From Convolutriloba macropyga (lineage: Eukaryota), in the NCBI RefSeq assembly GCF_964194025.1, contig NC_134479.1:34596001-34660000 (forward strand): a stretch of 64,000 nt of DNA. Direction: 5' to 3'. The notes beneath the pieces are model-generated. The model saw nothing but the letters and a program-made list of their open reading frames with translations, ran no database searches and was not told the DNA's origin. Position 1 is the first letter of the stretch, and every line of letters begins with the position of its first letter. Both the position numbers and the translations under genes were made by a program. Shown here piece by piece: positions 1 through 54,928 of this stretch.

Positions 1-36
1 GAAAACCGGTAAGCACAAAATATTTGATCCTTTCAG

Positions 37-141: not shown

Positions 142-159
142 GTAAGCTTGCGTCAACAA

Positions 160-289
160 NNNNNNNNNNNNNNNNNNNNNNNNNNNNNNNNNNNNNNNNN
201 NNNNNNNNNNNNNNNNNNNNNNNNNNNNNNNNNNNNNNNNNNNNNNNNNNNNNNNNNNNNNNNNNNNNNNNNNNNNNNNNNNNNNNNNN
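160..289. other. assembly gap (N run)
   Basis: 130 N. Confidence 1.
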
Positions 290-376
290 AGTAGTTGCTG
301 TTTTCTTGAGCTCCATTGTGTTAAGAGGTAAAGACCATTTATTTTTCATTTATAAGCTGCAGGGTTTCGTTAATGT

Positions 377-377
377 A

Positions 378-436
<59 letters not shown>
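377..436. repeat. (AG)n microsatellite, possibly the (CT)n 3' tail of the adjacent LINE
   Basis: direct reading; on the minus strand it is preceded by gaattaa. Confidence 0.95.
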
Positions 437-438
<2 letters not shown>

Positions 439-4800: not shown

Positions 4801-4862
4801 TAGAGGTATATTTACTTTAATTTCTGTGATACGAAATAATCCGGACATTGGTATTTTTCCAG

Positions 4863-5070
4863 GATCAAAGTTCAGGATCTCAAAGTGTCCAAATCGATTC
4901 CAACTACTCTTCTGGATGTCGATCGGATCCTGCATGAGGTGCCTCTCTTCGCCATAATCTCTGCATCCACCCACACTGAGACGTATTTAGCTCTGGCTAC
5001 TGTTGGTGGACAATATGCTGTTCCAGTGATTGACGCCGGAGTGGATAATCGCAAGGGATACTTTGCCTTG
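4863..5070 (+). CDS. receptor exon, amino-terminal domain (…LFAIISAST…QYAVPVID…)
   Basis: ttttccag acceptor (alternative ttcag at 4875), donor gtacgg (or gtaaat at 5077); resembles the ATD/PBP-type-1 fold start. Confidence 0.7.
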
Positions 5071-8000
5071 GTACGGGTAAATTCCAGGTTGAGGTCCCAG
5101 ACGGATTAGCTGTTCAAAATTCTGACCAAAGGCAACCTAAAAAAATTGTCAAAAGCAAAGGCCACTCTGTTCAAAACCTGGGCAAAGGTCAATTTAGTCG
5201 GGGTCCTCAAATTTGGCCAATCTTGCCGTGTTGTGTCTTGTTAATGTTGTCTTAGTTAAACCGATAACTCAAAAAATTGTAATTTTATTTTTTTCTTAAT
5301 TGTTGACTAGTTAAAACAAAGAATATTTTTAATAGGATCACGAAAACATTTTTTCTTAAAAAATGCCATTTTTCTACATTGTGACGTGCTATGTAACTTA
5401 ATTTGTAAGTGGGGTTCATAGAAAACATTTGGAGAGGTGGGGAGGGGGGCAAAATATGTCCCAAATTTGGTTTGGGAAATCAATAACCTGTTGTTCCGTT
5501 CCCACTTGGTTCGTTATAGGAGAACATCCAACTCTACTTCCACGTGGAAGAAGAGATCACGAGGAGCAAAGAGATCGAGGGTCTTGTGAGGGTGTTGAAT
5601 GCACTTTCGCTGCGGACCATGGGTGTCATTTATGAGGAGAAAGATCCCTATGACGTCTTTTATGAAGAGTTTGCTGAGAGTATCATCATGAATACGCAAG
5701 GTTGGTCCGGAGTCCAAGGTTTAGGGGAGGGGGTGGTAATTAATCACAAAATCTCGGACTAATGCATCTAAATTTTTATTTATGACTAATCTGTAATCAT
5801 TAATGATCTCTGTTCAACCAATTTAATTGGTTTCGCGTCAGTCATAAGTCATGGTCAATCATTGTAGTAAAGCTTAAGCTGAATGCATATAAAACAGAAT
5901 TATTGTTTTTGGCAAGAAATGATCAATAACAATTTCTATAAATCCGTCAGTAAACAATTGACGAAAAGACTGAAGCGAGATTTCTGGGAGTAACATGTGC
6001 TCTCTAAAGTGGCCCAAGGTATTAATTGTTTATCCAACTTGAAAGACTGCGTACCAACGCACTACTTCCTGTTATGATTAATTCTCTGGTAGTTGGCCAT
6101 TTGCAAAATTCAGCCCTATTATTGAGGATTATTGATAACAGCCTAATCGATATCTTTAGAAAAACAACTAAGCTTAACCTCCAAAATCGTGCTATAATTG
6201 TTCAAAATTCGAATTATCTATATAAATTAAGCTGCAATAAAAATTACTACCTGTTTGTTTCGGGCTCGACTGTAGATTGGCTTGCTATGTATACACTCTT
6301 CTTCCAACAACTAATCAAAGACGAGCCGTCAAAATGAATATCTCAACCTACTTTTGAAATTTAAGAGCTGGAAAATTTAGTCATCAAATATTAAGTAGGA
6401 GCAAAACTTTTATCCCGGAGAGCAATCTTGGAATTATATACAAATAACCCAAAAACAATTATACTATCTATCCAATTACTATAGCATATGAGATGCGAAA
6501 ACATGGCATGCTCATGAAAGATCCAGTTTTTTTGTTGCAATTTTAGAGTCGGCAAGACGTGGTGAGCTGGAGAACATCTTCACAGTGACGAATCAGTACA
6601 ACTTGACAATCCCTAACAACGAGGGATTCAGAGCTGCATGCAAAAGCCTCCTTCTGAATGATCAGACCACTTTGATCATCATTGGCAGCGCCAGGTTCCA
6701 TAGAAAGGTAATTAATGTTTCACAGAAAGATTACGGTTCCATAGAAAAGTTACTGTTCCACAGAAAGGTAACTACTGTTTCATAGAAAGATATCTGTTCC
6801 ATAGAAAAGGACTGTTCCACAGAAAGGTAACTACTGTTTCATAGAAAGATTACTCTATGCCATAGAAAGGTGACCGCTGCTTCTTAGAAAGTATACTTTT
6901 CCATATAAAGGTAACAGTTGTTTCATAGAAAGGTTGCTGTTTCACGGAAAGGTTACTGTTCTATAGAAAGGTAACTTCTGTTTCGTAGAAAGATTACTGT
7001 TCCATAGAATGGTAACACTGTTCATAGAAAGATTAATGTTTCATAGAAACGTTAATGTTCATAGAAATGTAACAACCACTTCGTAGAGAGATTACTGTAC
7101 CATAGGAAAATTACTGTTCTAGAGTAAAAGTAACTACAGTTTCATGGAAGATTACTATTTCGTGGAATATTTACTGATCCATAGAAAGGTAACAACTGTT
7201 TCATAGAAAGATTACTCGGATCTTTTCTGCTAGCGCCCCCCCCCCCCGCTTAGTTAGGCACACCCCATTTATAAATGTGTAAACATATTGTTAAAGCTAC
7301 GTAATCTTATACGTAACTTCTTAAGGAAACTATTCTAAAAGTGCCTTCAATCTACCTAGACAATCTTGTTTCAATGAAATGCAAATATCGCTCTCACAAT
7401 TCGCGAAAACTTAGATTTTGGGGGGTGCAAATTAAACGGCTATATAATGCTGGGGGGGGGGGCGCTAGCAGAAAAGATCCGATTACTCTTCCATAGCAAA
7501 TTTACTGATCGATAGAAATGAAACTACAAGTTTCATAGAAAGATTACAGTTCCTTTGAAGATTTTCTGATCCATGAAAGGCAACAACGGTTTCATAGACA
7601 AAAAAATGTTTCATGGAAAGATCACTGTTCCATAAAAAGGTAGCTACTGTAAGAAGAATATTAAAAGTTGCCCCTTTTTATGCAGAGTTTGTATCGTTTT
7701 TTTACTTCATATTACGCTGTAAAACGTACAATTTGGGGGCTTTTAGCAGTGACAACAGCTTCAATTAGCCCTAAATTGGTTTCTAGTTTGTTCAATAATT
7801 AATTAATATGTAATTTAGAATTCAAATTTTTCTCATGAGATTTTTTATTGATCATCTTAAATTATCCTACTCTTTAAAAAAGATAGTAATTCTACTTTTG
7901 ATGAAACTGAGTTTTGTAATCAAAACCCAAAAAGATGGAAAGCTGGAAAAAAAGTTTGAGATGCTTAACAAAATTTCTTTTCTGACTCTTTTGCCGGTAA

Positions 8001-11000
8001 CCAGAACCTGGGATATTGGGGGTTGTCCTCCAGAACAATTCCTGCGTAAAAAAGTAGAAAACATATTTGTGGCAACCTGAGGGCACGCTAAAACATCTGG
8101 TCAGTCCTCCTCTGAGTACCTAGAACTATGGCCTGATGCAATTTAGTTTATACTAAGTGGTGCTCTGTCGCAATGATTTAAGCCCTTAACGAGAGCTTGC
8201 AGGGCAAAGACCTGACTTTCCGTAAGGGGGAAAGATCTTTTCGTAACTATAAAATTGCAATTCTACCAATTTTGTAGAAGCTTTTTCATCTAATACATTG
8301 AGGATACATAAGAGGAAAGTTCTAGGATGAAAACTTTTAGTCGACAGGGTATCCTGCACCCAGGTTTTCTGCGAGATATTTCAAAATATTGTTTCCTGAA
8401 TATTGCATCCAACTCATTTATTCTTCAGTATAATTATTGTGTGAGGTTTGTTTCTCAGGTTTACAAGGAGTGCCAGGAATACATTGACAAGCACAGACCT
8501 GCCCTCATCAGCTCCAGTGACATCATGGCAGCTTCTCAGAAAGTCGTATCTCTCTTGCCCAACGGAATTCTCACATTAAAAGGCTCTTTTCTAGCAACGC
8601 CTTCTAAAAATTATTCGTAAACTTAAAAAATTAAACGTTGGACTCCATTGTGAGATTTTCGCAGAACACATCATGTTAGAATATCGATCAAACTATAGTC
8701 TTAAACTTAGTGAGAATTAGAAAGAAAGTTTGACTTACCAGATTAGAAAGACAAGCAATATGACTTTGATCAAAGAAATTATATAAATGAGTCGTCAAGA
8801 AATGGTGCTGAGAATCAAAATTCGGTTCAAATTGGTGAATCTAGATAACTATTATTAGAGTTAGATTAAGTGATGTAAAATCTTCCCAGCATGTATTAAA
8901 TGATGATGATATCTCCGGAAGTGTGAATGAATTCTTAGAAAAGTGCAAATGCATTCCATTTATGGTTCCCTTTGCGACTGATTTGCAGAAGCAAACCATA
9001 TTGGGTAACCTTTGCGACCCCCACTATAAATCACGGTGCTAAGATTAGTTTTGTATCTTGACTTTTTCACACTGATAATGGGTATATATATACAGCTGAT
9101 TTTTGAGTCCTTTTTCATCCCCAAATTCAAATCACCATCTTGATCTAATAATCAGATCTCTCCTGTAAATCTCTGAATTCTAATGTAAAAAATCATTCTT
9201 GTTATTCTCTCATTTTGAGAAACTATTTTTTTACTTAGTTAAAAACTCTTTTTATTCCGCTTGCGAAAACCCATAATCCAACAGGTTATGGGCCCAGCAA
9301 TTTTCTAAGTCATAAAATTGATTTCCAAAACAAAACCAATTTGTTGTTGACAGTCATAATCCTTTTCTGCTTAGTACCTTTTCTTTTCACAATTGTTTTG
9401 CCTGCTCAAACTTCAATGGATCAACAGACAGTGAAGCTGCTGACCTACACAGGAAAGGCACAGGACTTTCCAATCTGGAGCACAAGATTTGTGGCGATGA
9501 TGCAGACGAAGGGACTCTACAAATCACTACTGGGGACAGAGGAGCAACCCAATGAGCCTGCGCCACTGGCCAATGGGGCAACCAATGATGAGAAGAACCA
9601 CAAGGTGCTGAAGGATGCATATGAGAAGGAATTTGCAGACATCAAGGAGAACAATGTGTGGTGCCATCTGGCACTGACTCTAGATGCAACAACCCTCATG
9701 CTGATGAGACATGACTGTGTAGGAGATGATGGCATTGGAGATGGAGCAAAGGCTTGGAAGCTTTTGCAAGAGAGATTTCAGAGTGTGGAGACGCCGCCAG
9801 TGGTGACTTTAGTGGCACAGCTTGCTCGACTGCAGCTCGAGGATTCTGAGGATTTGGACAGCTTCTTCATCAGAGGACAGGAGTTGCTCACAAGGCTACA
9901 AGAAGCAGGGGAAGCAGTCTCAGAGACCCTCTTCAACGCCTTGGTCCTCAATAGTTTGCCAATGAGGTATGAAAGTTTTGTTATACAGGAAAGTTTCAAC
10001 CCGGCAACGAACTTCATAGAGTTGAGGAAAAGGCTGCAGAACTTTCATGAGAGCACGGTGCAGAGACACAAGGGACAAAGTGGTTCAGTGGCACTGGCAG
10101 TGAAGCGTGACTTCAAGAAGGGACCCAAGAAAGGAAACTGCTTTGTGTGTGGGATCCCTGGACACTTTGCCAAGGACTACAGGAAGAAGGAGACAGCACA
10201 ATGCAGCAAGTGTGGTGAGAAGGGTCACCTAGACAGGGCATGCAAGAGACAAAGAGATGGAGGCAAATATGAGTCAGTGGCAATGGGTCCAACATTGGCT
10301 ACACCAGACGAGGAGTGCTGGGCAGCTCTTACCCAGTGGAAGACAGCAGGCATGCTAGTGGACAGTAGTTGTACAGATCACATAGTGACGAACATCGATG
10401 CGTTTCTGGACTTTGTGCCCATTCAATCAGTGGTCAGAAATCCCAACGGAGAGGCTTCCAGAGTGGTGGGCAGAGGCTGTGTGAGGATCAGCATACCCTC
10501 AAACAAAGGGGAATTCCAATGCGAACTCAAAAATGTTCTGTGTGTGCCGGACTGTTCTTCAAACCTCCTATCAGTCTCAAGATGCACGGAGTGGGGACAT
10601 AGCTTCACTTTCGAGAGAGGAAACAGCTGCATGAAACTCCAGAAGGGAACTCGGGTAAAACTAACACAAAAAAATAATTTGTTTTACTTACCCTGCAGCG
10701 TTCTAGAATTCATGATGAGTTCCAACAGCGTGAAACTTGACAGTGCAAGGAAGTGGCACAGACGATTGTGTCATTTGAATCAAGCGGATGTGGTCAGGAA
10801 TGCACCAGAGACAGTGGGGGAACTCGATGATGTATGCAATGTGTGTGCACTGGCCAAGATCACAAAGACTCCAGTACCAAGAGTGGCAGAGACCCAAGCA
10901 GAAGAGAAGCTGGAGAGGGTGTTTACAGACGTGATGGGACCTTTCAGAGTAGAGTAACTGTCAGGGTTCCGGTTCTGCATTGTGTTTGCAGACCAGTACA

Positions 11001-14000
11001 CGAAGTTTGTGTTTGTGGACTTGCTTAATGCAAAGAGTGAAGCACTGGCCAGCCTGAAGAAATTTGTTTTCAGTGTGGTGACGCCCAAGAAGATGAGGCA
11101 AGACAATGCGAAGGAGTTTCTCTCAGAGCAGTTCAAGACGTACTGCTTAGATGCAGGCATTCTACAGGAAAAGACCATATCAGAGACGCCACAACAGAAT
11201 GGGTTAGCTGAGAGGTGCAACAGGACACTGCTAGAGATGGCAAGATGTTTGCTCATTGACTCAGGACTTCCCAAGATGATGTGGGGAGCAGCAATTCTTC
11301 ACGCAGCAAGGATCAGAAACTTGGTTGTGAGACGAGAAGAAAAATGCCCAGCAGAGCTGATGAGAGGTATAAAACCTAAGCTTCCAATTAGTAAATTATC
11401 TATTTTTGGTTGCACAGTCTTCATGAGGAAGAGGGACAGAGAAGTCAGCAAACTTGAACCCAAGGCACTGGAAGGAAAGTTTGTGGGTTACACTGAAGGA
11501 GAAAACGGATACCTGGTGTACATACCCAACACACGCAAGGTGATGGCAGTTCGAGATGTGATCATCAAGGAGTCTGAAGTGGGCTCAATCCCTGACAACA
11601 AAGAAACGGCTGACCTACTAGATGATGGGTCGGAACTGGGAATCTGGCACCCAGATGATGGTCATCAAGACGATGACAACAGAGAGCGACAGGACACATC
11701 TACTGCAATAAAGGAGGAGTGGCATGACGCAGGGAGCGTGAATACTCAAGAAACAACACTGAGACAAGAGGCCTCGGATGTTGGAGAAACAGCACTAGAT
11801 GAAGGATCTACTGCAACAAGAGGGAGTCACAGAGACTCAGAGTCACTGGAAGACAGTGACAGAGAAGACTTCTCACAGTTAGAGACAGTTGGCTTCAATG
11901 AAGATGCACTGGAACACGCGGACAGAGCAGAGCCCAGACGAGGGACACGAGCAAGGAATGTTCCGCAATTTTTTGGAGAAGTCAGGATCCATCTTGCTGT
12001 GACTGAGGGCGACTATGTGGAACCCAAAACAGTCTACGAAGCCAAGCAAGGTGACGATTGGGACCAGTGGCACCGGGCAATGAAGGACGAGGTCAAGGCA
12101 CTCCAAGACAACGAGACTTGGAACCTAGTGAGACCACCCACAGACAGGGACGTCATACCGGGCAAATGGGTCTACAAAATGAAATTGGGACCCAGTGGTC
12201 AAGTGGACAAATACAAAGCGCGCTATGTGGCGAAAGGCTTCAAACAAGTGGAAGGACTGGACTACTTTGAGACTTTTGCGCCTACCTGTAAGCCGGAGAC
12301 TTTCAGGATTCCACTTCAGCTATCAGCAAAGCAGGGCCATGTGATGCACCAATTTGATGTCAAGACTGCTTTCCTGCACTCACCAATCGAGGAAGAAGTG
12401 TATCTGGAACAGCCACAGGAGTTTGTAAAACGCGGATCAGATGGGGAGAAGTTAGTATGTCGACAAAATAAATCAATTTATGGTTTGAAACAGGCTGCTA
12501 ACAACTGGTACAGAGAGCTGGCAAACTTCCTACTGAGACAGGGGTTCACCAGAAGCAGGAACGATCACTGCTCGTTTGCAAGATCAGAGGCAGAGGATCA
12601 CACCTTCATCTTGGTCTGGGTTGACGACATCATAGTAGCATCAGGAAGTATGACAGTGGTCTCTGATGTCAAGAAGGCACTAGAAGCGACCTTTCACATG
12701 GAAGACAGAGGGAGACTACACTGGTTTCTGGGTCTAAGAATCAGACGAGAAGAGGGCAAAGTCACAGTCGACCAAGAACGCTACATAGAAACAATACTTG
12801 AGCGGTTTCAAATGGATCAAGGCAAACCCTCAAGAACTGCAGCTGATTTGAATTTGAAACTTCAGACAGCACAGAACGGAGACGAAGAAGTGGACCAGAG
12901 GATCTACAGAAGCTTGGTTGGATCACTTCTGTATCTGGCCAAACAGACGAGGCCAGACATCATGTTCACCGTCAACATTCTGTCCAGACACATGAATGCA
13001 CCTACCAATCAACACTGGATGTGCGGAAAACGACTTCTGCGATATCTTCAAGGTTCAAAAGGTTTAAAACTTACTTACACAAAAGAGGCTAGTTATGATT
13101 GAGTGGGGGAAAGTGATGCAGACTGGTCTGGAGACGTGAACGACCGAAAATCAACAACGGGCTATTACTTCAAGCTCAACGGACGTGGCGCAGCACTCAG
13201 CTGGGGTGTCAAGAAGCAGGCCACAGTTGCTCTTTCTTCATCAGAAGCAGAATATCATGGCATGGCAGCAGCAGTTTAGGAAGCACTCTACCTGAAACAA
13301 CTTCTAGAGGATTTTGGCATCCAACAGAAACGTCCAATAGCAATTGGAGAGGACAACCAAAGTTGTATCAGACTTTGCCAAAACCCAGTCATGCACAAGA
13401 GGAGCAAGCACATCGAGACAAAGTTCCACTTCATTCGTGACATGACGGAGGATGGGACTATTTCAATTCATTACGTTCCTACCCACAAAATGGCAGCGGA
13501 CATCTTCACAAAGTCCTTACCCGTTTCGAAAGTGGAAACCTTCATAGCAGTTTTGATGGGAACAGACTCTACGCAATCAGCTCAAGTCTGAGCGGGGGTG
13601 TTAGAATATCGATCAAACTATAGTCTTAAACTTAGTGAGAATTAGAAAGAAAGTTTGACTTACCAGATTAGAAAGACCAGCAATATGACTTCGATCAAAG
13701 AAATTATATAAATGAATCGTCAAGAAATGGTGCTGAGAATCAAAATTCGGTTCAAATTGGTGAATCTAGATAATTATTATTAGAGTTAGATTAAGTGATG
13801 TAAAATCTTCCCAGCATGTATTAAATGATGATGATATCTCCGGAAGTGTGAATGAATTCTTAGAAAAGTGCAAATGCATTCCATTTATGGTTCCCTTTGC
13901 GACTGATTTGCAGAAGCAAACCATATTGGGTAACCTTTGCGACCCCCACTATATATCACGGTGCTAAGATTAGTTTTGTATCTTGACTTTTTCACACTGA

Positions 14001-47000: not shown

Positions 47001-50000
47001 ATTCAGTTAATATAGGCTCTTCAAATATAAGCTGTAAACTACCAAAGCCTACCCATCGCCAGTCGTTTGAGAGAAATTTGACCGACGTTTATATAGTTTG
47101 CTTTTCGTTGTTGCCCAGACGCCTCAATTTTTTTTGACAGAATTTTCATTTTCTTTATACATTTATTTCTTTCGAAAACGATTGGTCGGGCTGTGCTATG
47201 CAACCAATCACATGACGTAAATAAAGATTTCGGCGCGGTTGCTTTTGGTTCAAATATAATACACTTTTTTGAAGAAAAGAGAAAGCGAGGCCCCTTAAAA
47301 TAATTTTAAGGCAAAAGATTTGTGTAAAGGTTTGAAACTTTTTCTTGATTAATACATTGTGAACAGCTACAATTAATGCTGTGTATAATAATTGCAATTT
47401 ACATTATGTTACAACGCATCAGATAAAAAGTGTGCCGTTTTTCTGGACATTGAGTGAGTGAGGTTGACCGGGCCTTTTATGCACTGTGGGAATCAAACAG
47501 GAAATTGTGGCCGGTTATCATGGCGACGAGTATTAATATTCCGCCATGGACTATTCACAAAAACTTTTATTTGGATTTTTCGGCTTATTTGAGCTCCTTT
47601 GGTCTGTTTTGTTTTCAGTGGTCAAAGAACAACATTAGTACCTTCCCTTTAAGCTTTGCGTAAGCCTTCCATGCGTAGCTGATATATAATGCTCGTCATT
47701 AAAGCGATTGTATTCAAAAGATGCGCACTCGTTGTTCGAGAGGAATTCGTCTGATATCTTTTTCAACAAATTGTTCATTACGTCGAATATGCTTAAGTTT
47801 ATACTAATGAAGCACTTCAATCCTGAAATACTTGCGTACAAATCTCAGGTCTGTCCAGTGGAAACAAATTCTTTAGTTTATTGTCCTAAAACGATCTTTA
47901 ATTCTTAGAATATTCTGGATCCTAAAACGCTCTATAATTCTTAGAAACGGAACCCTGGATGCATACTTTGACGATGCTCCAATAGTTTACTGGGAAGTGG
48001 CCACAGATCCAGACTGTAAGCTGGTGGCTGTTGGGAATACTTTTGGAGATGACTACTATGGCATTGTGGTGTCCAATGACATCAGCTGGGATCCATTCTA
48101 CATGACTCTGAACGAATACATCAACCGATACAGGGACAACTTATACCTCGGTTTGTTCCCTTTTAAAAAAGATTTAAAAAGCGTTGTTAATTTCCTGTAA
48201 TATACATAAGCATGAAATTCAAATGGTTAAGAGGTAGTGAACAGCTAAGTACATCGATATGTAATTTTTTTATAATGAAAAAACATAAAGAACATTAAAT
48301 TGATTATTTAAAGAACGTAACCTTACATTAGTAAAAGCGAGTTTAAAATTTGGTGCTCAATTTTCTATGTACAGCGTCAAGATTTACAATTTAATGAAAA
48401 TTTAAAATCCAACGCTTTCATTGACATCTTGTGCCTATCATTTTTTTAGTCCTTCAGAAAATCTTTCCAAAAATGTTCTTTCAACTCTTTTTCAAGGAAG
48501 CTCTCGATGTTGTTTAAAGTCTGAGATTATAAGGCAGACTATTATCTGGTAGCCAAACTGCCTTTTCAATTGTTCCTTCCTTGTGACTCCCCCCCCCCCT
48601 CCCCTCCCCGCGCCAAAACCTTCCTAGAACTGCTACTGATCGTCTCTTGACTAGGACCTCTGGGACCTAATAATGACATGTCAAGTTGGTTGTTTTTTCC
48701 TGAGTGGCATAGTTTGTTAAAAATACGAATAACCAACTTGCTAACAATTCATTATTACCCCTATCTTGCACAATGCCCATAACCGGTGCTTAACTAACCA
48801 TAATGGTAAACATTGTGTTAGAGTTCAGGAAGTCCAATTTATCCCCTATCATCTTATATGGCAAACTTAGTAGTATACTTTAATGGTACGTAGTTTTTTA
48901 TGTCCCTGTTATTTCAATTAATTCAACGTTTCAAAAAACACTCGGTCTAGTTCAAAGGTCCGAGTTGAAATCTAAAACCAGGTCGATGAATACGTACAAA
49001 ACGAAATGGACTTCAAAAGGAAAAGGCGTTAGCATTCAATTGAACACATTGATGCCCAGTTGCATGTTCTGGCGCGTTTATTGAACGCTCGCCGATTTCA
49101 ACTTTATGAGACAGACTATATAGTTAGCCCCATAAAGTTGCAACACAAGCGGACGTTCGAAAAACTCCCACCATACAAATGAAAAACGAAATGCTGATTT
49201 CTGCATGTTTTAAAAACGGTATTTGACCTTAGAAACGTTCAATAGCGTTGTAATTTTATGCGACTAACTATAGTCTGTCCCATAAGGTTGAAATTATCGA
49301 ACGTTCGATTTGAGCATGCAAATGAGCAATGTGGATAATGTTTTTTTGATAAGTTCGATCATTTCAACTTTTTGTAACACGCAGACTACATAAGTGTTGA
49401 ATTAACAAATGCACAGACAAATTATACCTCTAATATTTCTAAGTTTTGCAGCTACAAAAAACAAAAAGTACGAAAAAATATTTTTGGAATTTTAAGGTTG
49501 AATTACTGAAATTCAAGTCTTAAAATACCGGATCTTCACAATGCTGAATTCTAGAGTGCGAGCTTTTCCCATATATGGTGCCAGATCATAATAAATGCAA
49601 CTGCAATGGTTATATTTTCCAAGCAAGTTTCGTGATTCTGTAAAACTCTCTTCGGAGTCGAACCACTGCACGGTTCTCGATGAATGACAAATGCCAGATT
49701 TTCAGTGATTTCATCAAACTTGTTGTATGATGAAATGACACATTGACACATGCCTCCGGATGTGTCAATGTAAATAGAAATTTGCGTATTTTAGACAAAC
49801 TGCGCGAGAAATGGCTTGAGGACTATCGATCTTGCCCTTCGAGAGATGAAATTCAAAACTCTCTCGGTCTCTCACACATTGGAGGACTTTTCTACGCCTT
49901 AATTGCCGCTTGTGTGGTTTCTTTCGTCATCCTAATTGTGGAAATATTGGTCGAAAAGGGTTTGGACAAGTTTGCAGTGCAGCATCAACCGCCCAAGTTT

Positions 50001-53000
50001 TTGAAACATCATAGTTTGGTAAGTTCGTTTTCAAAATTTTTGCCGATGGGTTTTTGATCTCATTTTTGTACCCATAGGATGTCTGTCTTTTGTCAATTAG
50101 ATAGAATAGGGACATTTATAATCGGTATTGTTAGTGGGAACGCAGGCTGAGGTCATCATTAAAAAACTCATTCAAAGAATCAAAACAAAAGTCAGGCTTG
50201 GTTAAACAATCCGGACGTTATTCAGCCATGAGCAGACGCTACCTCGTTCATGATAAGCCAATACGTAGATTCTGACCATACTGATCGAGCGAGTCATAAG
50301 AGCGCACCATATTACCTTGTCTGATTATAGGCTATGAAGTAACCCACTTTATAATGCTACAAATGCTTTTCTATTAGATTTTTAAAGCAGCGGCAGAACG
50401 AATAGGAGCAATTATACTGAATCAATGCCGTTTTTCTGTCGTCAATTTTTTTTTAGGAATTTTAATTATTTTCAACGTTACGAGGATCAGATTTTGGTTA
50501 CCTTTTCATAGCATTTTGTAATACATTATAAACGAAATAATTGTTGAGAAGGTCGGCAATTATCATAAAATTTATTTTTAAAAATCATTTAAAACAAAAA
50601 TTGATTAAAAAATACGTTTCAACGATTTTTGTAATAATCATTAACTACAAAAGCAAATTTTAAAAAAATACGTTCCTATATCATTAATTTCTTTCTCGAA
50701 AATTATCCACATGGACGTCTTTTAGCTGAGACATTCTACAAAAACATCTTGAAATGAAAGTTAGCTTAAGTCGAGATTACATTACACGCATACATTTCGT
50801 CTGCCCGCCGTGAATCCATACCGCTATGTTTAAAACCTTTGTCGGATGAGACATGCACCTCTCATATGCACACATTTCTTTGAGCTTAAGATTCTTAAAT
50901 CCCTTATTAATAGCCCCGATGCAATAGCTGAGGCTATTTTTGGTCTTCATTTGGTTTTTTTACGACTTGAAGAGGAGTATTGGTTTTCTATTGGTATTTT
51001 TGTTTTTTACAGCAAGTGGTTTTGTTCATGCGTAATTTTAACCTAAAAGCAAAAGTGAGAAAAGCTGTTATGGTGAACAGATTTTTTCTAAGCGAGAGAA
51101 TTTTTTTGATCATACACTGCGTTAGATGAATGGCTTTTTAAAATGTCTTTGAAAAACGTTTTTGAGAGACCGCTGCATAGAGATAATCGTTTTTAGCCGT
51201 TTTTTCGGCCATTTGGCTCATTTTCTTTTTAAATCTGTAATATGGTTTTTTGTAGAAATAGTTTTTGATTGACGCTGCAATAATTTGTAGCTTTCTGAAA
51301 TTGATACCAAAAGTTTTGCAGTGTGTAATATTTTTTTTTCAAGTGTATAATGGGCTTATATTTCTCAATTTTATAGTGTTTTTTTTTTTGAATTTTTCCC
51401 CTTAATATCTTCATTTTGATCTGCGAGAGAACTTTTTTCTTAAAAATCAGTGAATATGGCAACGTTATTTTGGCAATTTTTGCATTGATCAAAGCTAGCT
51501 TTTTTGTTTTATGATATTGTACACATACTAGTCCGTTTTTTTTTGCAATTTTTTGTTCAACTTTTTGTTTTTCGTTTGTTTTTGTTTTTAATTCAAATAT
51601 TCGTTCTGTGCACAGCCAGTGGTTTAATTTCGTGTTATGAGAAATTGATTTATTTCTTTACGATTATTTTTTGAATTTCAATGAGATATTGTTTTTTTTT
51701 AAATTACAATTTTAATATTTTTATATATAATTTTCATATTTTAACAATTTTCATAAAGTTCTTTAATTTTTCGAATCTCTTGAAATCTTTTTTCATTTTT
51801 CTTATGTAGATAGACCGCTGACTGTGTATTGTTTTTGAACCATGATTGCTAAATAAATATAGGTACTTATGTTTTGGTCGATAATTTTGTGGAGTGTGTT
51901 TAAAAGAGAATGTAAAAAATAATGCCGCATGTGAAAACTACTTGTTTAGGTCAGCCGGCGGATCGAATCGAAGAGCACAGCAAAGAAAGTGGTTCTCTGT
52001 TCGTATCGTTTTTTGAGAGAGACAAAGAATGTGTGAAAAAGTTTTCGCTAGGCGAGCAATTTTTAACTAGTTCGGCTTTTTTATTGCTGTTTTTTTTTTA
52101 GTTTGAATTTCAATCTTTCGATGCGAAGTGTTTCTCACAATTATCTAATCTAGTTATTGTGTTTTTGGAAGCGGTTTGACCATCTTATGCAATTTTAATA
52201 CTTTTAGACTCAATTTCCAGCTATTTTTAACTTCTATTTTAAGCTCTTCTAAAAGTTTAAGCCTGTTTTAAGCTCTTTTAAAGATTTATATCTTCAATTG
52301 TTATAACAATTCCGGAATTGTCTGACTGAAATTAGTTGAACTAGCAGTTTGTCTGGTTTTTCATTTGGATTGATATCTATTCAAATGTTTTTGAGGGGAA
52401 TTGGCTAATTTCGAACAAATATTTGCCGATTTTTTTGAGTTTTTGTGTTTATCTACTTCTGCTGATCTTAGGTCTCTCCCTGTAATTTTTTTCTGATTGT
52501 TTTTTAGTTCAGAACTATTCTTGGGGTGTTGCTACCATGTGGTTAAATTTCAAGGATGAACATGATGCTTTTCACTGAAATAAATTACACAATTTTGTTC
52601 ACGTTTTTTGTTCTCGGCAGTTTCCAATAGCTGTTTGGTGTTTTTCTCCTACCTTTTGGATCAGTGACTCATCTAGAAGAAGAAGTTATAAACGGTTATA
52701 AACTGTAAACTGAATAATGCTAGGAAATAATTTTGAAAGCTAAACAGGGATTTTGTCACTTAAACAAATTGAACAATTTTCTTATTTTTTATGGTTTTTT
52801 TGCTATTTTATTATTCTAATTGTTGGTTGTTACTTCTCCGTCAAATATTGGGTGGGCGACTGATGTACAGGAGATTTTATGTATTATTTGTGCTCATTAA
52901 TGGTTCGGAACGTGCATTTAACCTTTTCATAGATTATTAGTGAATGTTTCTTTTTGGTTTTGTCAGTCATCGTGTTTCCCTTTCCTGGAGTTTCTCTTTA

Positions 53001-54928
53001 TGAACCCCATTCCATACGATTGGCTTTATTTTGTGCTTGTTGTGATTATTTTGTTGTAATCGAACTGTACTACAGGGTTTTTTGCTGATAGTTTTTTTGG
53101 AGTTGCAATTAAAGATAAGTTTTATCAGATGGTGTATCAGTTGTTGTCAGAAAGGCTTCTCATGATATTTATCCTGTTGTTGTTTCGAAACGCCCAGTAA
53201 AATCATTCAGAAAGGCCATTAGATCAGGAAGGATGGTCACTTCTCTTCTTCGAGTCGGTTCCGGATTTCTTCCGGCTATGTTTTTTATTGCGTCGTCAAG
53301 ATGTTTGTTACGACCATATGACGTCAAAATCATTTTTTGTTCATTCGTTCATGCAATTTCGACTGCAATGCGTGCGTGACGTCATTTTTCACTCTTAGTG
53401 ATGCGAGTTTTTTGTCGATTCGCGTGATTGAGTTTTTTGTCAAACGTGACTTACCTCACTCTCAAAAATAACTTCCTCACTCTGAAATTGACTTTTCGGT
53501 ACTTTAATTCAAAGAAATAAGTTCAAGTGAGTGTATGTCACTTTAATTGAAGGTTATTTAAGAGCAGCCAATAGAAGCAGCAATTAGTTATACAGATTCC
53601 TAATCAAAATTTAACATCGCAGCGCCTAATGAAAAGAATATTTTATTTTGGTCTGTCTTTTTGAGACTGCAGATCTATGAAGCTATTGAGGCTATTTTCT
53701 GGCATTTTGCCAGCTATGTTTTTATACTTCATTTAATGGGCAATGTTTATTGATCATTATTAAAATCATTTTTTGCTTCATGGTATTACCCAAAACATCA
53801 AAAAATAGCCAAGACAAATGTTTTTAATAATGAAAGTTGAGTCAAAATGCCGGATCTCTGTCGTACAGTATTCTAGAATGTCAGATTTTGACATTATTGA
53901 TAACTGAGCTTGTGTTTAAAGCAAGGCTGTTGTCGCTTTGGAATTCTGGCTTACCCGTGTAGCCGCTCTACAGATCTCAATCAATGCGAGATTTTCTCCG
54001 TTACTTTATCTTAGTCATGTAGCATATACTTCAGCATCGTTTGCAGAAACAAAAAAGATCCTTTAAGTGTTAGTTTTTAAGTTTTTATTTGTTATTTTTG
54101 GAAATAAGTTTTTTTTCAGCAACTGTATGAAATGTGGAAGCACAAAGAGAATAGGCAGCAGCAACACCAGTCATCTGACTCTCAATCTCAGGAGCTGCAT
54201 CAACATCAGAATGGAAGCGTCATCTCAAACTTCACTCTCAGGTTTCAAGTATCACTCATGTAATATCCCGGGTCACTTCATACAACTTTCCTTGATTTCA
54301 TACAATGTTATATATTGTTTCTATATTGTTCATACAAAGATCATATATGATTCTTGGTAACCATACAAGGCCATGCAAGGTTCTTGGTAACCATACAAGG
54401 CCATGCAAGGTTCTTGGTAAACATACAAGGTCATATATGATTTGTATGATTTCCTGTTTATCAGACTAAGATCATATATGGTTTGCTGGAAACCATACAG
54501 GTGTCATGCAAAAAATTCTCCTTAAAGGAGAACCTGCAAAATATTGGAAACCGTCTCCTCCGCCTCATAATGAAACTGAGTGGCACAAACGGAAGAGATC
54601 AGATTTTACTGTCTGAAACTTCTGCTGCGTTTTCAGAGTACCAACCATCAAAACTGAGGACCCTTCCTTCAAGCCAGGTGTGAAAACAACAATCGTCTCT
54701 CACCCTGATACTGAGAACCCATACATTCACACCAATCAAATACCAACCAATCAGCGCCTGACTAAACGTTCAACCAATCAGCAACCAGCATCCAAATCGA
54801 AGAACAAATTAGCCGAAAATGGTGCTCTGGGCGCTAAGACAAAAACACGGGAAAAAGAAATCCTTGATCTGTACAAAGAAGTTTACAGTTACGAGGATGA
54901 AGATGTTCAGTACGAAATACACGTATAA
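4863..54928 (+). CDS. NMDA-type ionotropic glutamate receptor subunit, GluN3-like (spliced, >=18 exons, ~1070 aa, 5' exon(s) unresolved)
   Basis: Hand-spliced exons 4863-5070, 5520-5700, 6547-6707, 8459-8582, 14767-14962, 16148-16251, 16585-16771, 17402-17551, 21592-21674, 24322-24472, 27791-28019, 30913-31329, 31963-32108, 47945-48150, 49795-50018, 51950-51988, 54120-54241, 54637-54928 join in one frame. Motifs: EPF; NMDA loop-1 C..C..CCxG; [27 protein letters not shown]; M1; M2; CYTANLASF; YGAVKGSSV; LDAYFDD...[10 protein letters not shown]; M4. Confidence 0.92.
5520..5700 (+). CDS. receptor exon, ATD ([12 protein letters not shown]…MGVIYEE…)
   Basis: tatag acceptor, gttggt donor, phase 0 to 1. 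Confidence 0.75.
6547..6707 (+). CDS. receptor exon, ATD (…[20 protein letters not shown])
   Basis: ttttag acceptor, aag|gtaatt donor, phase 1 to 0. Confidence 0.75.
6695..7650 (+). repeat. degenerate ~19-22 bp minisatellite derived from an exon/donor junction (gttccatagaaaggtaactact / gtttcatagaaagattact)
   Basis: first unit overlaps the last codons of exon 6547-6707 and its donor; interrupted by a MITE. Confidence 0.9.
7218..7480. mobile_element. MITE with GGATC…poly-C / poly-G…GATCC TIRs and 8-bp TSD GATTACTC (Merlin-like)
   Basis: TIR ggatcttttctgctagcgcccc; TSD at 7210-7217 and 7481-7488. Confidence 0.9.
8459..8582 (+). CDS. receptor exon, ATD (VYKECQEY…LPNGILTLK); donor uncertain
   Basis: tttctcag acceptor; LPNGILTL resembles the NMDA ATD PxGxxG/S strand. 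Phase matching to the next exon suggests a non-canonical GC donor at 8583. Confidence 0.6.
8674..9283 (+). repeat. Copia 5' LTR
   Basis: near-identical to 13599-14207. Confidence 0.97.
9416..13591 (+). pseudogene. Copia gag-pol polyprotein with in-frame stops
   Basis: zinc knuckles, LVDSSCT protease, HRRLCH/C..C and DVMGP…RQDNA…PQQNG integrase, [23 protein letters not shown] RNase H; stops at 10955, 13100 and ~13277 in the same frame. Confidence 0.95.
13599..14207 (+). repeat. Copia 3' LTR
   Basis: follows the PPT; ends CA then TSD CATCA. Confidence 0.97.
14468..14662. mobile_element. Merlin-like poly-C/G MITE
   Basis: ggatcttttccgtttgtgcccc … gggggcacagacggaagagatc; degenerate TSD catagttg/cgaagttg. 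Confidence 0.75.
14767..14962 (+). CDS. receptor exon, ATD (…[16 protein letters not shown]…)
   Basis: ttgtag acceptor (alternative ttag at 14736), aa|gttagt donor, phase 1 to 2; DAV motif. Confidence 0.7.
15050..15224. mobile_element. degenerate poly-C/G MITE relative
   Basis: C-run start, tttttttacattgtaacgtg core, gggggcagaatagagcc end. Confidence 0.45.
16148..16251 (+). CDS. receptor exon, late ATD
   Basis: gcgcag acceptor, gtttgt donor, phase 2 to 1. Confidence 0.7.
16585..16771 (+). CDS. receptor exon, ATD end / S1 start (IKWTGN…[16 protein letters not shown])
   Basis: ctttag acceptor; L(K/R)I..I.EPF S1 signature; AG|GCAAGC donor. Confidence 0.85.
16784..16938. mobile_element. degenerate poly-C/G MITE relative
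   Basis: C-runs and the same ttttttacat…gtggggcataaaaa core as 15050 and ~5340-5460. Confidence 0.45.
17402..17551 (+). CDS. receptor exon, S1 loop 1 (CDFGHVC…[13 protein letters not shown])
   Basis: NMDA-family disulfide loop with CCxG motif; canonical splice sites. Confidence 0.9.
20824..20964. mobile_element. Merlin-like MITE, GGGTCTTTCCC TIR variant, 8-bp TSD TCTGAAAG
   Basis: TIRs with poly-C/poly-G; TSD on both flanks. Confidence 0.85.
21592..21674 (+). CDS. receptor exon, S1 ([16 protein letters not shown]…)
   Basis: matches the iGluR L..DL.F.Y.LY pattern; tttcag / gtaatt. Confidence 0.85.
23090..23170. mobile_element. tiny foldback element flanked by TTAA (piggyBac-like MITE)
   Basis: 34-bp perfect arms ctattatgaggttatttgaggcccccttctgaat, 11-nt loop, TTAA on both sides. 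Confidence 0.75.
24322..24472 (+). CDS. receptor exon, S1 (T/S-rich insert then [20 protein letters not shown])
   Basis: WxGMVG…ADL motif; tttcag / gttagg. Confidence 0.9.
25630..26800. repeat. degenerate ~170-180 bp tandem repeat array
   Basis: motif (t)agcctcaagagccaa recurs at ~25690, 25862, 26030, 26208, 26385. Confidence 0.7.
27791..28019 (+). CDS. receptor exon, S1 end + M1 ([16 protein letters not shown]…[10 protein letters not shown]…)
   Basis: conserved ligand alpha-carboxyl-binding Arg, FS.P, FL.P..VW pre-M1/M1. Confidence 0.93.
28447..28611. other. assembly gap (N run)
   Basis: 165 N. Confidence 1.
28612..28710. mobile_element. right end of a CCC-ended EnSpm-like non-autonomous element
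   Basis: homologous to 45935-46012 and 56984-57052 (tcgtactaggaaatac…gatccttgtatg…agcggc). Confidence 0.6.
30365..30526. mobile_element. Merlin-like MITE, 8-bp TSD CAAAATTG
   Basis: ggatcttttccgtttgtgcccc … ggggcaaacagaaaagatcc; exact TSD. Confidence 0.88.
30913..31329 (+). CDS. receptor exon, M1-M2 loop, M2 pore and M3 (CYTANLASF)
   Basis: SYTANLAAF-like gate; tttcag / gtaagt. Confidence 0.95.
31359..31525. mobile_element. Merlin-like MITE (same subfamily as 30365)
   Basis: homologous interior and TIRs; 30 bp downstream of the M3 exon donor. Confidence 0.8.
31732..31935. repeat. ~21 bp minisatellite (gtgctgatcattgactgaa-a)
   Basis: about 9 degenerate units directly upstream of acceptor 31962. 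Confidence 0.85.
31963..32108 (+). CDS. receptor exon, S2 ([12 protein letters not shown])
   Basis: S2 G.V..SS motif; ttttag / gttagt. Confidence 0.92.
32410..34250. mobile_element. TIR element (CCCCAGTCGA…TCGACTGGGG, TA TSD) whose interior is a 29-31 bp tandem satellite
   Basis: about 60 units of atggttatcttgcaagtttctggcagaa(aa/tga); the final unit is inverted next to the right TIR. Confidence 0.92.
35841..45754 (-). mobile_element. non-autonomous gag-only LTR retroelement with 2.3-2.7 kb LTRs and an internal tandem duplication
   Basis: TG…CA ends, TSD TCTGC; LTRs 43062-45754 and 35874-38220; PBS TGGCGCTCCTGGATGGGC (43041-43058); PPT AGGAGGGAGGAG (38221-38232); broken gag-like ORF, no pol. 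Confidence 0.8.
39044..44152. repeat. ~2.55 kb tandem duplication (39044-41578 / 41579-44152)
   Basis: near-identical ORFs duplicated, e.g. 39766/42347, 40178/42759, 40933/43507. Confidence 0.93.
46045..46285. repeat. ~30 bp degenerate minisatellite (gtattctatgcttacctgcagggtgccaaa)
   Basis: about 8 units. Confidence 0.8.
47945..48150 (+). CDS. receptor exon, S2 (LDAYFDD…[19 protein letters not shown]…YGI)
   Basis: close to the GluN3 DYEVSIDADCKLLTVGKPF pattern. Confidence 0.93.
49090..49300. repeat. inverted-repeat (MITE-like) element
   Basis: ~50 bp imperfect inverted arms atttcaactttatgagacagactata… / …tatagtctgtcccataaggttgaaat. Confidence 0.55.
49795..50018 (+). CDS. receptor exon, S2 end + M4 (KLREKW…C…[13 protein letters not shown]…)
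   Basis: L..KW…C…L….GG.F M4 signature; ttttag / gtaagt. Confidence 0.93.
51950..51988 (+). CDS. small receptor exon, proximal CTD ([13 protein letters not shown])
   Basis: tgtttag acceptor, phase 0-0; donor at 51989 or 51992. Confidence 0.55.
54120..54241 (+). CDS. receptor exon, Q/H/S-rich CTD
   Basis: ttttcag acceptor, ag|gtttca donor, phase 0 to 2. Confidence 0.7.
54267..54502. mobile_element. short CCC-ended EnSpm-like element with subterminal repeats
   Basis: cccgggtc start, catacaagg(t/c)cat repeats. Confidence 0.6.
54637..54928 (+). CDS. receptor terminal exon ending …YEIHV*
   Basis: tttcag acceptor, phase 2, open to TAA at 54926-54928. Confidence 0.75.

What the first reader, a model, noticed from the sequence alone, without database searches (positions are those of the whole stretch)
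4863..54928. Highly divergent GluN3-like NMDA receptor subunit with an intact reading frame across ~50 kb of TE-laden introns
Seen: 18 exons splice in phase into ~1070 aa with no stop, although about 94% of the span is intron. Known: the CCxG loop, SSV and DCKL..VG motifs are NMDA-family features. The SLN…LF M2 pattern, MTGR..Y after M3 and [12 protein letters not shown] are closest to GluN3 (ALN…LFGRT; MVGEKIY; YEVSIDADCKL). Inference: this is a lineage-specific GluN3/GluN2-3-type paralog whose combined pore, gate and pocket substitutions may give new pharmacology. It is the best candidate here for an undescribed system.
Basis: partly seen in the sequence, partly recalled or inferred. Interest (0 to 1): 0.7.

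Follow-up and report, generated by a model that had tools for sequence, protein, structure and literature searches.

The report
Acoel GluN3-like NMDA receptor subunit gene
This is a real gene, still kept intact by natural selection, for a nerve-cell glutamate-receptor subunit of the NMDA family in an acoel worm; it is a fast-evolving relative of the "GluN3-like" subunits of other invertebrates rather than a new kind of receptor.

Summary
A multi-exon NMDA-family iGluR gene does lie on the + strand across about 50 kb. Ten exons (16585-53650: S1, M1, M2-M3, S2, M4 and a post-M4 motif) have canonical GT-AG sites in phase, and relatives support their order. The four amino-terminal-domain exons have only weak support. 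The C-terminal exons cannot be verified. The N gap (28447-28611) lies inside the M1-to-M2 intron in every in-frame model.

Selection is visible. Nine of 10 variants from a second haplotype in the M2-M3 exon are synonymous, and synonymous sites are saturated against relatives.

The tree, per-exon scores and motifs (SSV, LF.HT, M.G, SQRL) favour the invertebrate "GluN3-like" group. A GluN2-side or pre-duplication placement is not rejected (AU p 0.11 and 0.18), and no GluN1 reference was available.

Most of the "unusual" residues are shared with other invertebrate GluN3-like proteins. Only Leu at the Q/R/N pore site and the degenerate M1-M2 linker are special to the acoel clade, which has at least two paralog lineages. 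An earlier scan note reports a Leu-pore NMDA-type subunit elsewhere in this genome.

No RNA data were found. Verdict: new member of a known kind.

The parts
4863..5076 (+).
   Evidence: Acceptor ttttccag|G at 4863. Weak collinear profile hit at positions 56-121, i-Evalue 0.6-2. Donor cgg|GTAAAT at 5076 is in phase with the next exon. No similarity to the ATD exon of relative L001.
5520..5708 (+). Candidate amino-terminal-domain exon B. The 3' end is approximate.
   Evidence: Weak collinear profile hit at positions 134-187, i-Evalue 0.3-1.2. Acceptor gttcgttatag|GA at 5520, phase 0.
8459..8617 (+). Candidate amino-terminal-domain exon D. This is the homology core; the splice sites were not fixed.
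   Evidence: tblastn against the ATD exon of relative L001 (L001:8380-8523), E 4e-4 to 9e-5, 26% identity.
8674..14120 (+). Young Ty1/copia-type LTR retrotransposon inside an intron.
   Evidence: Direct repeats 8674-8973 / 13599-13898 at 99% identity. Pfam Retrotran_gag_2, zf-CCHC and gag_pre-integrs, and RVT_2 at 214 bits.
16101..16251 (+). Candidate exon F, at the end of the ATD and the ATD-S1 linker.
   Evidence: Matches L001:9035-9163, E 3e-4. Donor cag|GTTTGT at 16251 is in phase 1 with the acceptor at 16585.
16585..16783 (+). Exon G, the start of ligand-binding segment S1.
   Evidence: Profile i-Evalue 1e-5. 37-39% identity to L001/L005. Acceptor tgttttcccctttag|GC. Phase-2 donor at 16783 or 16789.
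17402..17551 (+). Exon H, S1 loop 1 with the NMDA-type cysteines (C..C...CC.G).
   Evidence: Profile i-Evalue 3e-4. Acceptor tttctttag|CT and donor cag|GTTGCG in phase 2.
21592..21674 (+). Exon I, S1.
   Evidence: 59% identity to the contiguous ORF P0001 of L001. Acceptor gtgtttcag|GC and donor cag|GTAATT.
24388..24472 (+). Exon J, S1. The acceptor is at 24388 or 24400.
   Evidence: 50-52% identity to P0001/L001. Pfam Lig_chan-Glu_bd E 0.004. The donor tag|GTTAGG gives ...IGSI|SITNER, exactly as in L001.
27791..28019 (+). Exon K: end of S1 (SITNER arginine), pre-M1, M1 and the start of a degenerate M1-M2 linker (EMLSRK in place of EW.SP.G).
   Evidence: Profile i-Evalue about 1e-20. 78% identity to L002 and 63% to L001. 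PDB best hit GluN1 at 41 bits. The donor AG|GTCTGTAAACAT is conserved in L002.
28447..28611 (.). Assembly gap (N) inside the intron between exons K and L.
   Evidence: Every in-frame donor/acceptor pair places it in the intron. It was not filled.
31012..31329 (+). Exon L: K/P-rich M1-M2 linker, M2 pore loop (LFLHT), M3 (CYTANLASF) and MTGRLTY.
   Evidence: Pfam Lig_chan 43.9 bits. PDB best hit GluN2. 70% identity to L002. Donor gtt|GTAAGT. 9 of 10 variants from a second haplotype at 30969-31299 are synonymous in this frame.
31963..32108 (+). Exon M, the start of S2 with the glycine-type SSV motif.
   Evidence: Profile i-Evalue 9e-5. 48-52% identity to L001/L002/L004/L005. Acceptor tgtttgttttag|AT and donor caa|GTTAGT.
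32426..34217 (.). Intronic minisatellite, 59 copies of a 31-nt unit.
47945..48150 (+). Exon N, S2 (LDAYFDD, DPDCKL).
   Evidence: Profile i-Evalue 2e-15. PDB best hits GluN3B and GluN3A. 56-59% identity to L001/L004/L005. The splice sites give ...NLYL|DKLREKW, as in L001.
49795..50018 (+). Exon O: end of S2 (the cysteine partner of DPDC), pre-M4 and M4.
   Evidence: Profile i-Evalue 2e-8. 37-42% identity to L001/L004. Donor ttg|GTAAGT at 50018.
53596..53650 (+). Probable exon P, carrying the post-M4 motif [11 protein letters not shown].
   Evidence: This was the only [ITVLF]SQ[RK] match downstream of M4. GluN3-like references have SQRL(H/F)R at this place, whereas GluN2 has SRGI (alignment). 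Acceptor ttatacag|AT is in phase 0 with the donor at 50018. The motif alone could be chance, with about 0.1 expected.
54617..54928 (+). Unverified.
   Evidence: The frame is open, but there is no homology, and many alternative in-phase joins exist.

Best explanation
The span holds a functional gene for an NMDA-family ionotropic glutamate receptor subunit of an acoel worm; an earlier scan note names the genome Convolutriloba macropyga. The gene belongs to a fast-evolving acoel clade whose best-supported position is within the invertebrate 'GluN3-like' group, together with hemichordate, echinoderm, amphioxus and lophotrochozoan 'NMDA 3A/3B-like' proteins.

Shown: the exon structure of the LBD-TMD core, NMDA-family membership, purifying selection, and the motif pattern.

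Inferred:
- The subunit binds glycine or D-serine rather than glutamate. It has the S1 Ser-x-Ser...Arg, S2 Ser-Ser-Val instead of Gly-Ser-Thr, and the conserved Asp.
- It assembles with other NMDA-type subunits into a cation channel.
- Its pore tip is Leu-His instead of Asn-Asn. Like GluN3's Gly-Arg, this should lower Ca2+ permeability and Mg2+ block.
- The Ser at the eighth position of SYTANLAAF and the long degenerate M1-M2 linker may tune gating.
For: Gene and family:
- Collinear profile hits.
- Pfam Lig_chan above its cut-off.
- Only NMDA subunits among the significant PDB hits for three exons, and for relative P0001 (GluN3A 109.8 bits, GluN2C 108.8, GluN1 97.7).
- Ten exons in phase with canonical sites at the positions homology predicts.

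Selection:
- pN is 0.13-0.39 against saturated pS of 0.7-1.0 in comparisons with L002, L001 and L004.
- 9 of 10 second-haplotype variants in exon L are synonymous, where 24% is expected.

Class:
- The nearest named proteins are invertebrate NMDA 3A/3B-like.
- In the tree, the acoel clade has support 100/98, sits inside a GluN3-like clade at 97/98, and falls in the invertebrate subclade at 94/93.
- Summed per-exon bits are 153 against 106 and 104.
- The motifs LF.HT, M.G, SS[AV], AY.DD and SQRL are shared with GluN3-like references and not with GluN2.
Against: - No RNA evidence was found. The four public runs look like DNA.
- No start codon or signal peptide was found, and the ATD exons are barely detectable.
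- The conserved EW.SP.G motif after M1 is lost.
- AU tests do not reject the acoel clade grouping with GluN2 (p 0.105) or lying outside GluN2+GluN3 (p 0.177).
- A 76-column S2 tree is unresolved.
- No GluN1 or AMPA/kainate/delta reference could be included in the trees.
- The best vertebrate class differs from exon to exon: GluN1 for K, GluN2 for L, GluN3 for N, kainate for O.
Confidence: 0.68

Rival explanations
1. The acoel clade is its own NMDA class. It branches before the GluN2/GluN3 split of other bilaterians, or at least outside both classes, and its GluN3-like motifs are retained ancestral states.
For: AU p is 0.177 for a tree with all non-acoel GluN2+GluN3 rows held together, a loss of only 4.9 log-likelihood units. 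The clade has a long stem branch of 0.89. The S2 tree leaves the clade at an unresolved base. P0001 is almost equidistant from GluN3A, GluN2C/D and GluN1 in the PDB.
Against: The free ML tree nests the clade within GluN3-like at 97/98 and 94/93. Specific motifs are shared with one invertebrate GluN3-like subgroup: AY.DD, SSV, LF.HT and SQRL.
Confidence: 0.2
2. It is a divergent GluN2-type, glutamate-binding subunit.
For: The M2-M3 exon's best PDB hits are all GluN2, with the P.GT..K loop like GluN2's NPKGTTSK. AU p is 0.105 for acoel+GluN2.
Against: S2 has SSV rather than the GST found in all GluN2 rows. The post-M3 segment is M.G rather than MIQE. The post-M4 motif is SQRL rather than SRGI. 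The pore is LF.HT rather than VFNNS. Per-exon scores are lower for GluN2, and the free tree separates the two at 97/98.
Confidence: 0.07
3. It is a decaying or non-functional copy, which would explain the missing 5' end, the lost SP.G motif and the transposable elements in its introns.
For: No start codon or signal peptide was found. The ATD is hardly recognisable. No RNA run was found. No protein from this gene is present in the protein collections.
Against: All ten core exons are open and have intact canonical splice sites in phase. 9 of 10 variants between haplotypes are synonymous. The divergent linker and its donor site are conserved in the L002 relative. The transposable-element insertions lie in introns only.
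Confidence: 0.05

Closest known systems
Invertebrate 'glutamate receptor ionotropic, NMDA 3A/3B-like' predicted proteins: Ptychodera flava XP_070564328.1, Saccoglossus kowalevskii XP_002734104.2, Glandiceps talaboti XP_077981410.1, Acanthaster/Asterias/Antedon, Owenia fusiformis CAH1776022.1, Mizuhopecten XP_021365011.1, Tubulanus XP_074641443.1
   Same: They fall in the same subclade in the S1-M3 tree (94/93) and give the highest per-exon scores. They share LF.HT at the pore tip, M/L/I-A/T-G after M3, and SS[ACIV] in S2. Owenia, Tubulanus and Mizuhopecten share AY.DD. They also share SQRL after M4.
   Different: Identity is only 36-48% in the best-conserved exons. The window's gene has Leu where they have Ser, Gly or Cys at the Q/R/N site. 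It has YTANLASF, which it shares only with one amphioxus protein. It has lost EW.SP.G after M1 and has a long K/P-rich M1-M2 linker. Its ATD is barely alignable.
Vertebrate GluN3A/GluN3B (PDB 9oeh, 8usw, 2rc7, 2rca)
   Same: These are the best PDB hits for the S2 exon and for relative P0001. They share the glycine-type S2 motif (SSA against SSV), S.S...R in S1, DADCKL against DPDCKL, MVGEK.Y against MTGRLTY, and TSQRLHR against TSQRLMKR.
   Different: They sit in a different subclade (98/91). Their pore tip is Gly-Arg, against Leu-His here. They have AAV in M3, against ASF here. They have M-D in the pocket where the window has D-D.
Unannotated acoel-clade genes on ENA assembly contigs (L001/L003 and L005, L002, L004; ORF fragments P0001-P0003, P0133-P0135)
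   Same: These are the nearest relatives in 1.84 billion representatives, at 58-78% identity in exons. They share Leu at the Q/R/N site (seen in L001/L003 and L004; that position was not found in L002), YTANLAS(F/V)MTGRLT and DAY.(D/G)DAPIV. L002 shares the degenerate linker and its donor site.
   Different: Intron positions differ. L001-type genes have one fused exon where the window has four. L002 splits M1 and M2. L001-type genes keep EWFSPYGLNP.
GluN2 subunits (PDB 5uow, 8e92, 9d37)
   Same: NMDA family. They are the best PDB hits for the M2-M3 exon and have a similar M2-M3 loop, P.GT..K.
   Different: GluN2 has GST in S2, NN at the pore, MIQE after M3 and SRGI after M4.

Membership tests
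Ionotropic glutamate receptor superfamily | Pfam Lig_chan (PF00060) channel domain above the curated cut-off | tested here: met
   43.9 bits against a cut-off of 30.8 on the M2-M3 exon.
Ionotropic glutamate receptor superfamily | M3 gate motif SYTANLAAF | tested here: met
   CYTANLASF, 7 of 9 identical, in window 31258-31284.
Ionotropic glutamate receptor superfamily | Bipartite S1/S2 ligand-binding domain with the alpha-carboxylate Arg and alpha-amino Asp, and an M1-M2-M3...M4 topology | tested here: met
   The SITNER Arg is in exon K and LDAYFDD is in exon N. M1, M2, M3 and M4 lie in exons K, L and O, in the right order.
NMDA-type subfamily | Closest solved structures are NMDA subunits | tested here: met
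   only NMDA subunits head the lists for S1-M1, M2-M3, S2 and relative P0001. The M4 exon alone prefers kainate receptors, and only weakly at 23 bits.
NMDA-type subfamily | Extra loop-1 cysteines (C...C...CC.G) and the S2 DCKL...C disulfide pair. This feature is recalled from knowledge of GluN1/2/3 structures. | tested here: met
   Exon H reads CDFGHVC...KCCDG. Exon N has DPDCKL and exon O has YRSC.
GluN3 class (broad sense, including invertebrate GluN3-like) | Phylogenetic placement inside the class | tested here: inconclusive
   The free tree places it inside at 97/98. AU tests do not reject grouping with GluN2 (p 0.105) or a position outside GluN2+GluN3 (p 0.177). There was no GluN1 or AKDF outgroup; plant GLRs were used as the root.
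GluN3 class (broad sense, including invertebrate GluN3-like) | Glycine-type S2 motif Ser-Ser-(small or non-polar residue) instead of Gly-Ser-Thr | tested here: met
   GSSVQ in exon M. References have SSA, SSC, SSI, SSP or SSV, and GluN2 rows have GST. The criterion is from PMC6307864 (positions 653 and 655).
GluN3 class (broad sense, including invertebrate GluN3-like) | Pore-loop pattern LF-x-(H/R)-T and post-M3 M/L-x-G | tested here: met
   LFLHT and FMTGR. The x position holds Leu only in the acoel clade.
GluN3 class, vertebrate sense (GluN3A/B) | Gly-Arg at the Q/R/N and +1 sites; membership of the vertebrate-containing subclade | tested here: not met
   It has Leu-His. The tree places it in the other subclade.
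GluN3 class | Obligate assembly with GluN1 and activation by glycine | not testable with these tools
   This needs expression studies. Whether this genome has a GluN1 could not be searched. A 2026 preprint's survey lists no acoel GRIN1 (10.64898/2026.09.05.749567).
Intact expressed gene | Start codon, signal peptide and a full open frame | tested here: not met
   The model begins at an acceptor site at 4863. No signal-peptide-like start lies in 1-4900 on the + strand. The 5' exon may lie outside the window.
Intact expressed gene | Spliced transcript | not testable with these tools
   No RNA run was found. The runs that were laid are DNA-like and show no splice joints.
Intact expressed gene | Purifying selection on the frame | tested here: met

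The most novel reading that the evidence does not exclude
The acoel genes form a separate NMDA-type class that split off before, or independently of, the GluN2/GluN3 duplication of other bilaterians. They carry a hydrophobic Leu at the pore's Q/R/N site. They may also work without a canonical GluN1 partner, since one recent survey lists no acoel GRIN1, for example as glycine- or D-serine-gated channels with unusual ion selectivity.
Probability: 0.15. Interest if true: 0.55.

Novelty: new member of a known kind. Interest (0 to 1): 0.3.

Why it matters
It documents NMDA-family (GluN3-like) subunits in Acoela. This lineage is important for reconstructing the first bilaterian nervous system, and one recent orthology survey reported no acoel NMDA-type genes. 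The comparison also shows that several 'odd' GluN3 features are ordinary for an invertebrate GluN3-like group that has no vertebrate member and, as far as I found, no functional study. These features are His after the Q/R/N site, an acidic pocket residue and the SQRL post-M4 motif. The Leu pore residue is a simple, testable candidate for altered Ca2+ permeability and Mg2+ block. For genome annotation, the locus shows rapid intron gain and loss between acoel paralogs.

Tried and rejected
- RNA evidence. The look-up of sequencing runs (kind rna) gave four runs of one study, none on record as RNA. Laid on 28612-32200, they cover introns as short unitigs and show no splice joints. Repeat-driven joints at 30384-31420 are transposable-element or low-complexity artefacts.
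- Protein searches. The first homologous-protein search with P0008 drew its words from the ATD and returned only six hits, including plant GLRs. The third search, with exon L, found no protein of this gene in the 58-185 aa range.
- GluN1 and AKDF references. I could not obtain any with the capped searches, so plant GLRs served as the outgroup.
- ATD. Pfam finds nothing in the single ATD exons. The open frames at 6492-6782 and 14676-15044 show no convincing similarity to the relative's ATD exon. Exon A has no similarity to L001's first ATD exon.
- C-terminus. Junction enumeration after 53650 gives dozens of in-phase options, so nothing can be concluded there.
- S2-only tree. At 76 columns it is unresolved, and it nests GluN2 inside GluN3-like rows.
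- M1-to-M2 junction. The alternatives 27982>31095 and 28023>31085 are less likely than 28019>31012. Only the AG|GT at 28019 is conserved in L002, and synonymous variants extend upstream to 31021.
- PDB searches with exons M and H gave no significant hits.
- Joined model. Scripts joined only two neighbouring exon cores at a time, to test whether a candidate junction keeps the frame open.

Full report
**What is there.** The window has about 37% G+C and N runs at 160-289 and 28447-28611. A profile built from 17 full-length NMDA-type proteins hits a strictly collinear series of + strand open segments from about 4.9 kb to 50 kb. It hits nothing comparable on the minus strand. A profile built from invertebrate GluN3-like proteins gives the same series. 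Pfam places Lig_chan on the M2-M3 exon at 43.9 bits against a cut-off of 30.8, and gives weaker Lig_chan-Glu_bd and SBP_bac_3 hits on the S1 exons. So a multi-exon iGluR gene is real.

**Exon model.** I searched the model exon by exon, by reference. Scripts joined only two neighbouring exon cores at a time, to test whether a candidate junction keeps the frame open.

Ten exons have canonical GT-AG sites in phase at the positions predicted by homology:

| Exon | Coordinates | Content |
|---|---|---|
| G | 16585-16783 | start of S1 |
| H | 17402-17551 | S1 loop 1 |
| I | 21592-21674 | S1 |
| J | 24388/24400-24472 | S1 |
| K | 27791-28019 | end of S1, M1 |
| L | 31012-31329 | linker, M2, M3 |
| M | 31963-32108 | start of S2 |
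| N | 47945-48150 | S2 |
| O | 49795-50018 | end of S2, M4 |
| P | 53596-53650 | post-M4 motif |

A related gene on an ENA contig (L001) carries the equivalents of exons I-L as one uninterrupted 203-codon ORF, P0001. This acts like a cDNA for those junctions. The joins ...IGSI|SITNER... and ...NLYL|DKLREKW... reproduce it exactly.

The amino-terminal domain is only weakly supported:
- Exons A (4863-5076) and B (5520-5708) have profile i-Evalues of 0.3-2.
- Exons D (8459-8617) and F (16101-16251) match L001's ATD exons at E about 4e-4 and 3e-4.
- Pfam sees nothing in these exons.

I found no signal-peptide-like start upstream. That region holds a minus-strand LINE-type element.

After exon P there are dozens of chance in-phase joins, so the last exon(s) ending at 54928 are unverified. 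I therefore could not reproduce '18 exons, about 1070 aa'. I could reproduce a solid core of about 520 codons.

**The assembly gap.** The gap lies about 430 bases downstream of exon K's donor and 2.4 kb upstream of exon L. The closest relative (L002) shares the divergent sequence after M1: AYVEYVTPSKP...NQQ against [17 protein letters not shown]. It also shares the same donor context, AG|GTGTGCAAACAT against AG|GTCTGTAAACAT. This fixes a phase-0 donor at 28019, which pairs with the phase-0 acceptor at 31012. M1, a K/P-rich linker and M2 are all present outside the gap, so nothing is demonstrably missing. A micro-exon hidden in the gap cannot be excluded. The stretch used for read laying begins just after it.

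**Is it under selection?** Against L002, L001 and L004, nonsynonymous differences are 0.13-0.39 per site, while synonymous sites are saturated at 0.7-1.0.

No RNA run was found. The four runs found cover introns as short unitigs, so they are DNA-like. They do carry a second haplotype. Of its 10 differences at 30969-31299, nine are synonymous in the exon-L frame and one is Met>Ile, where 24% synonymous would be expected by chance. That argues for present-day constraint. It also supports a coding exon reaching upstream at least to 31021, which is consistent with the acceptor at 31012.

**What class is it?** The best vertebrate class changes from exon to exon:

| Exon | Best PDB class |
|---|---|
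| K | GluN1 |
| L | GluN2 |
| N | GluN3B/3A |
| O | kainate receptors (weak) |

Relative P0001 scores GluN3A 109.8 bits, GluN2C 108.8 and GluN1 97.7.

In 1.84 billion representatives, the nearest sequences to exon L are unannotated ORF fragments on ENA contigs at 58-69% identity. Next come invertebrate 'NMDA 3A/3B-like' proteins of hemichordates, echinoderms, molluscs, a nemertean and an annelid at 35-41%.

An ML tree of the S1b-M3 region (188 columns, LG+C20) used plant GLRs as the root and GluN2 rows for comparison:
- The window's exons K and L fall in a 100/98 clade with the ENA genes.
- That clade lies inside a 97/98 clade of all GluN3-like rows.
- Within it, the clade sits in a 94/93 subclade with ambulacrarian 'type 1', one amphioxus protein and lophotrochozoan proteins.
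- Vertebrate GluN3A/B sit in the sister subclade at 98/91.

Per-exon phmmer medians sum to 153 bits for the invertebrate-type group, 106 for the vertebrate-type group and 104 for GluN2.

There are caveats. AU tests do not reject the acoel clade joined to GluN2 (p 0.105) or placed outside GluN2+GluN3 (p 0.177). A 76-column S2 tree is unresolved. No GluN1 or AKDF sequence could be obtained for the trees.

**Motifs.**

| Site | Window | GluN3A | Invertebrate GluN3-like | GluN2 | GluN1 |
|---|---|---|---|---|---|
| S1 | GSISITNER | TSFSINTAR | | GSLTINEER | |
| S2 ligand-selectivity | GSSVQ | SSA | Owenia SSV | GST | SSV (from my own knowledge) |
| S2 pocket | LDAYFDD | IMD | LDD in Owenia, Tubulanus and Mizuhopecten | IYD | |
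| Pore tip | LFLHT | LFGRT | LF[SGC][HN]T | VFNNS | |
| M3 and after | [16 protein letters not shown] | YTANLAAVMVGEK | YTANLASF also in one amphioxus protein | | |
| Post-M4 | LTSQRLMKR | TSQRLHR | SQRL(H/F)R | SRGI | |

Only two features are clade-specific:
- Leu at the Q/R/N site. It is present in the window, L001/L003 and L004. That position was not found in L002.
- Loss of EW.SP.G after M1, together with an expanded linker. This is seen in the window and L002 only.

**Family structure.** L002 and L005 come from one ENA sample. L005 is at least 90% identical to L001's ORF, while L002 is the window's closest relative. So at least two paralog lineages predate the split of those species. Intron positions differ strongly between them: the exons are fused in the L001 type, and M1 and M2 are split in L002.

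An earlier scan note (s1-224154) reports a Leu at the Q/R/N site of an NMDA-type subunit on another piece of this genome. That is probably the other paralog, but I could not check it. I did not verify it. It is consistent with the fast-evolving sequence and with the relatives coming from unannotated ENA assembly contigs.

**Mechanism (inferred).** This is a glycine- or D-serine-type NMDA-family subunit that co-assembles with other subunits. Its Leu-His pore tip probably reduces divalent permeability and block. From my own knowledge, the Ser at the eighth position of SYTANLAAF corresponds to the 'Lurcher' position, and it may bias gating.

**Literature.** Ramos-Vicente et al. 2018 (PMC6307864) define the NMDA1, 2, 3, 2/3 and NMDA-Cnidaria classes and the 653/655 ligand rule. 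A 2026 preprint (10.64898/2026.09.05.749567) lists no acoel GRIN1 and calls GRIN3 chordate-restricted. This locus shows that that survey missed divergent GluN3-like genes. Wang et al. 2026 (PMC13520880) used a C. macropyga gene set for AMPA receptors, so an annotation exists outside the collections searched here.

**Verdict.** This is a real, constrained, divergent acoel member of the invertebrate GluN3-like group. It is a new member of a known kind and of modest interest.

Noticed in passing
window 8674-14120: A young Ty1/copia-type LTR retrotransposon on the + strand. Its LTRs are 99% identical and its gag and pol frames are largely open. It begins only about 57 bases after candidate exon D.
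   Followed up: partly
window 1755-3835 (minus strand): A LINE-like element with an endonuclease/exonuclease/phosphatase ORF and an RVT_1 reverse-transcriptase ORF. It lies upstream of the first recognisable exon.
   Followed up: partly
window 32426-34217: A 1.8-kb minisatellite of 59 copies of a 31-nt unit at 95% match, with a 92-nt higher-order period. It lies just downstream of exon M and is open in all three + frames.
   Followed up: no
window 35950-45450: Complex direct repeats in the 15.8-kb intron: units of about 2.57 kb repeated at 38.5-43.8 kb with 96-99% identity, and a 36-38 kb block repeated at 44.4-45.5 kb. The region has a strongly negative GC skew.
   Followed up: no
L001:9968-10579 against window exons I-L; L002:920-1870 and 10220: Intron positions differ sharply between acoel paralogs. 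Four window exons are one fused exon in L001/L003/L005. L002 has extra introns inside M1 and at the M2 pore tip.
   Followed up: partly
window 29452-29571, 30292-30531, 31372-31491: Very high unitig depth (10^4-10^5) and many repeat-type joints in all four DNA runs. These are highly repeated short elements in the introns, including the poly-C/proline-like stretch right after exon L.
   Followed up: no
tree: 'GluN3-like' proteins split into two bilaterian-wide subclades. One contains vertebrate GluN3A/B, together with amphioxus, hemichordate 'type 2' and a nemertean. The other has no vertebrate member and contains ambulacrarian 'type 1', one amphioxus protein, lophotrochozoans and acoels.
   Followed up: partly
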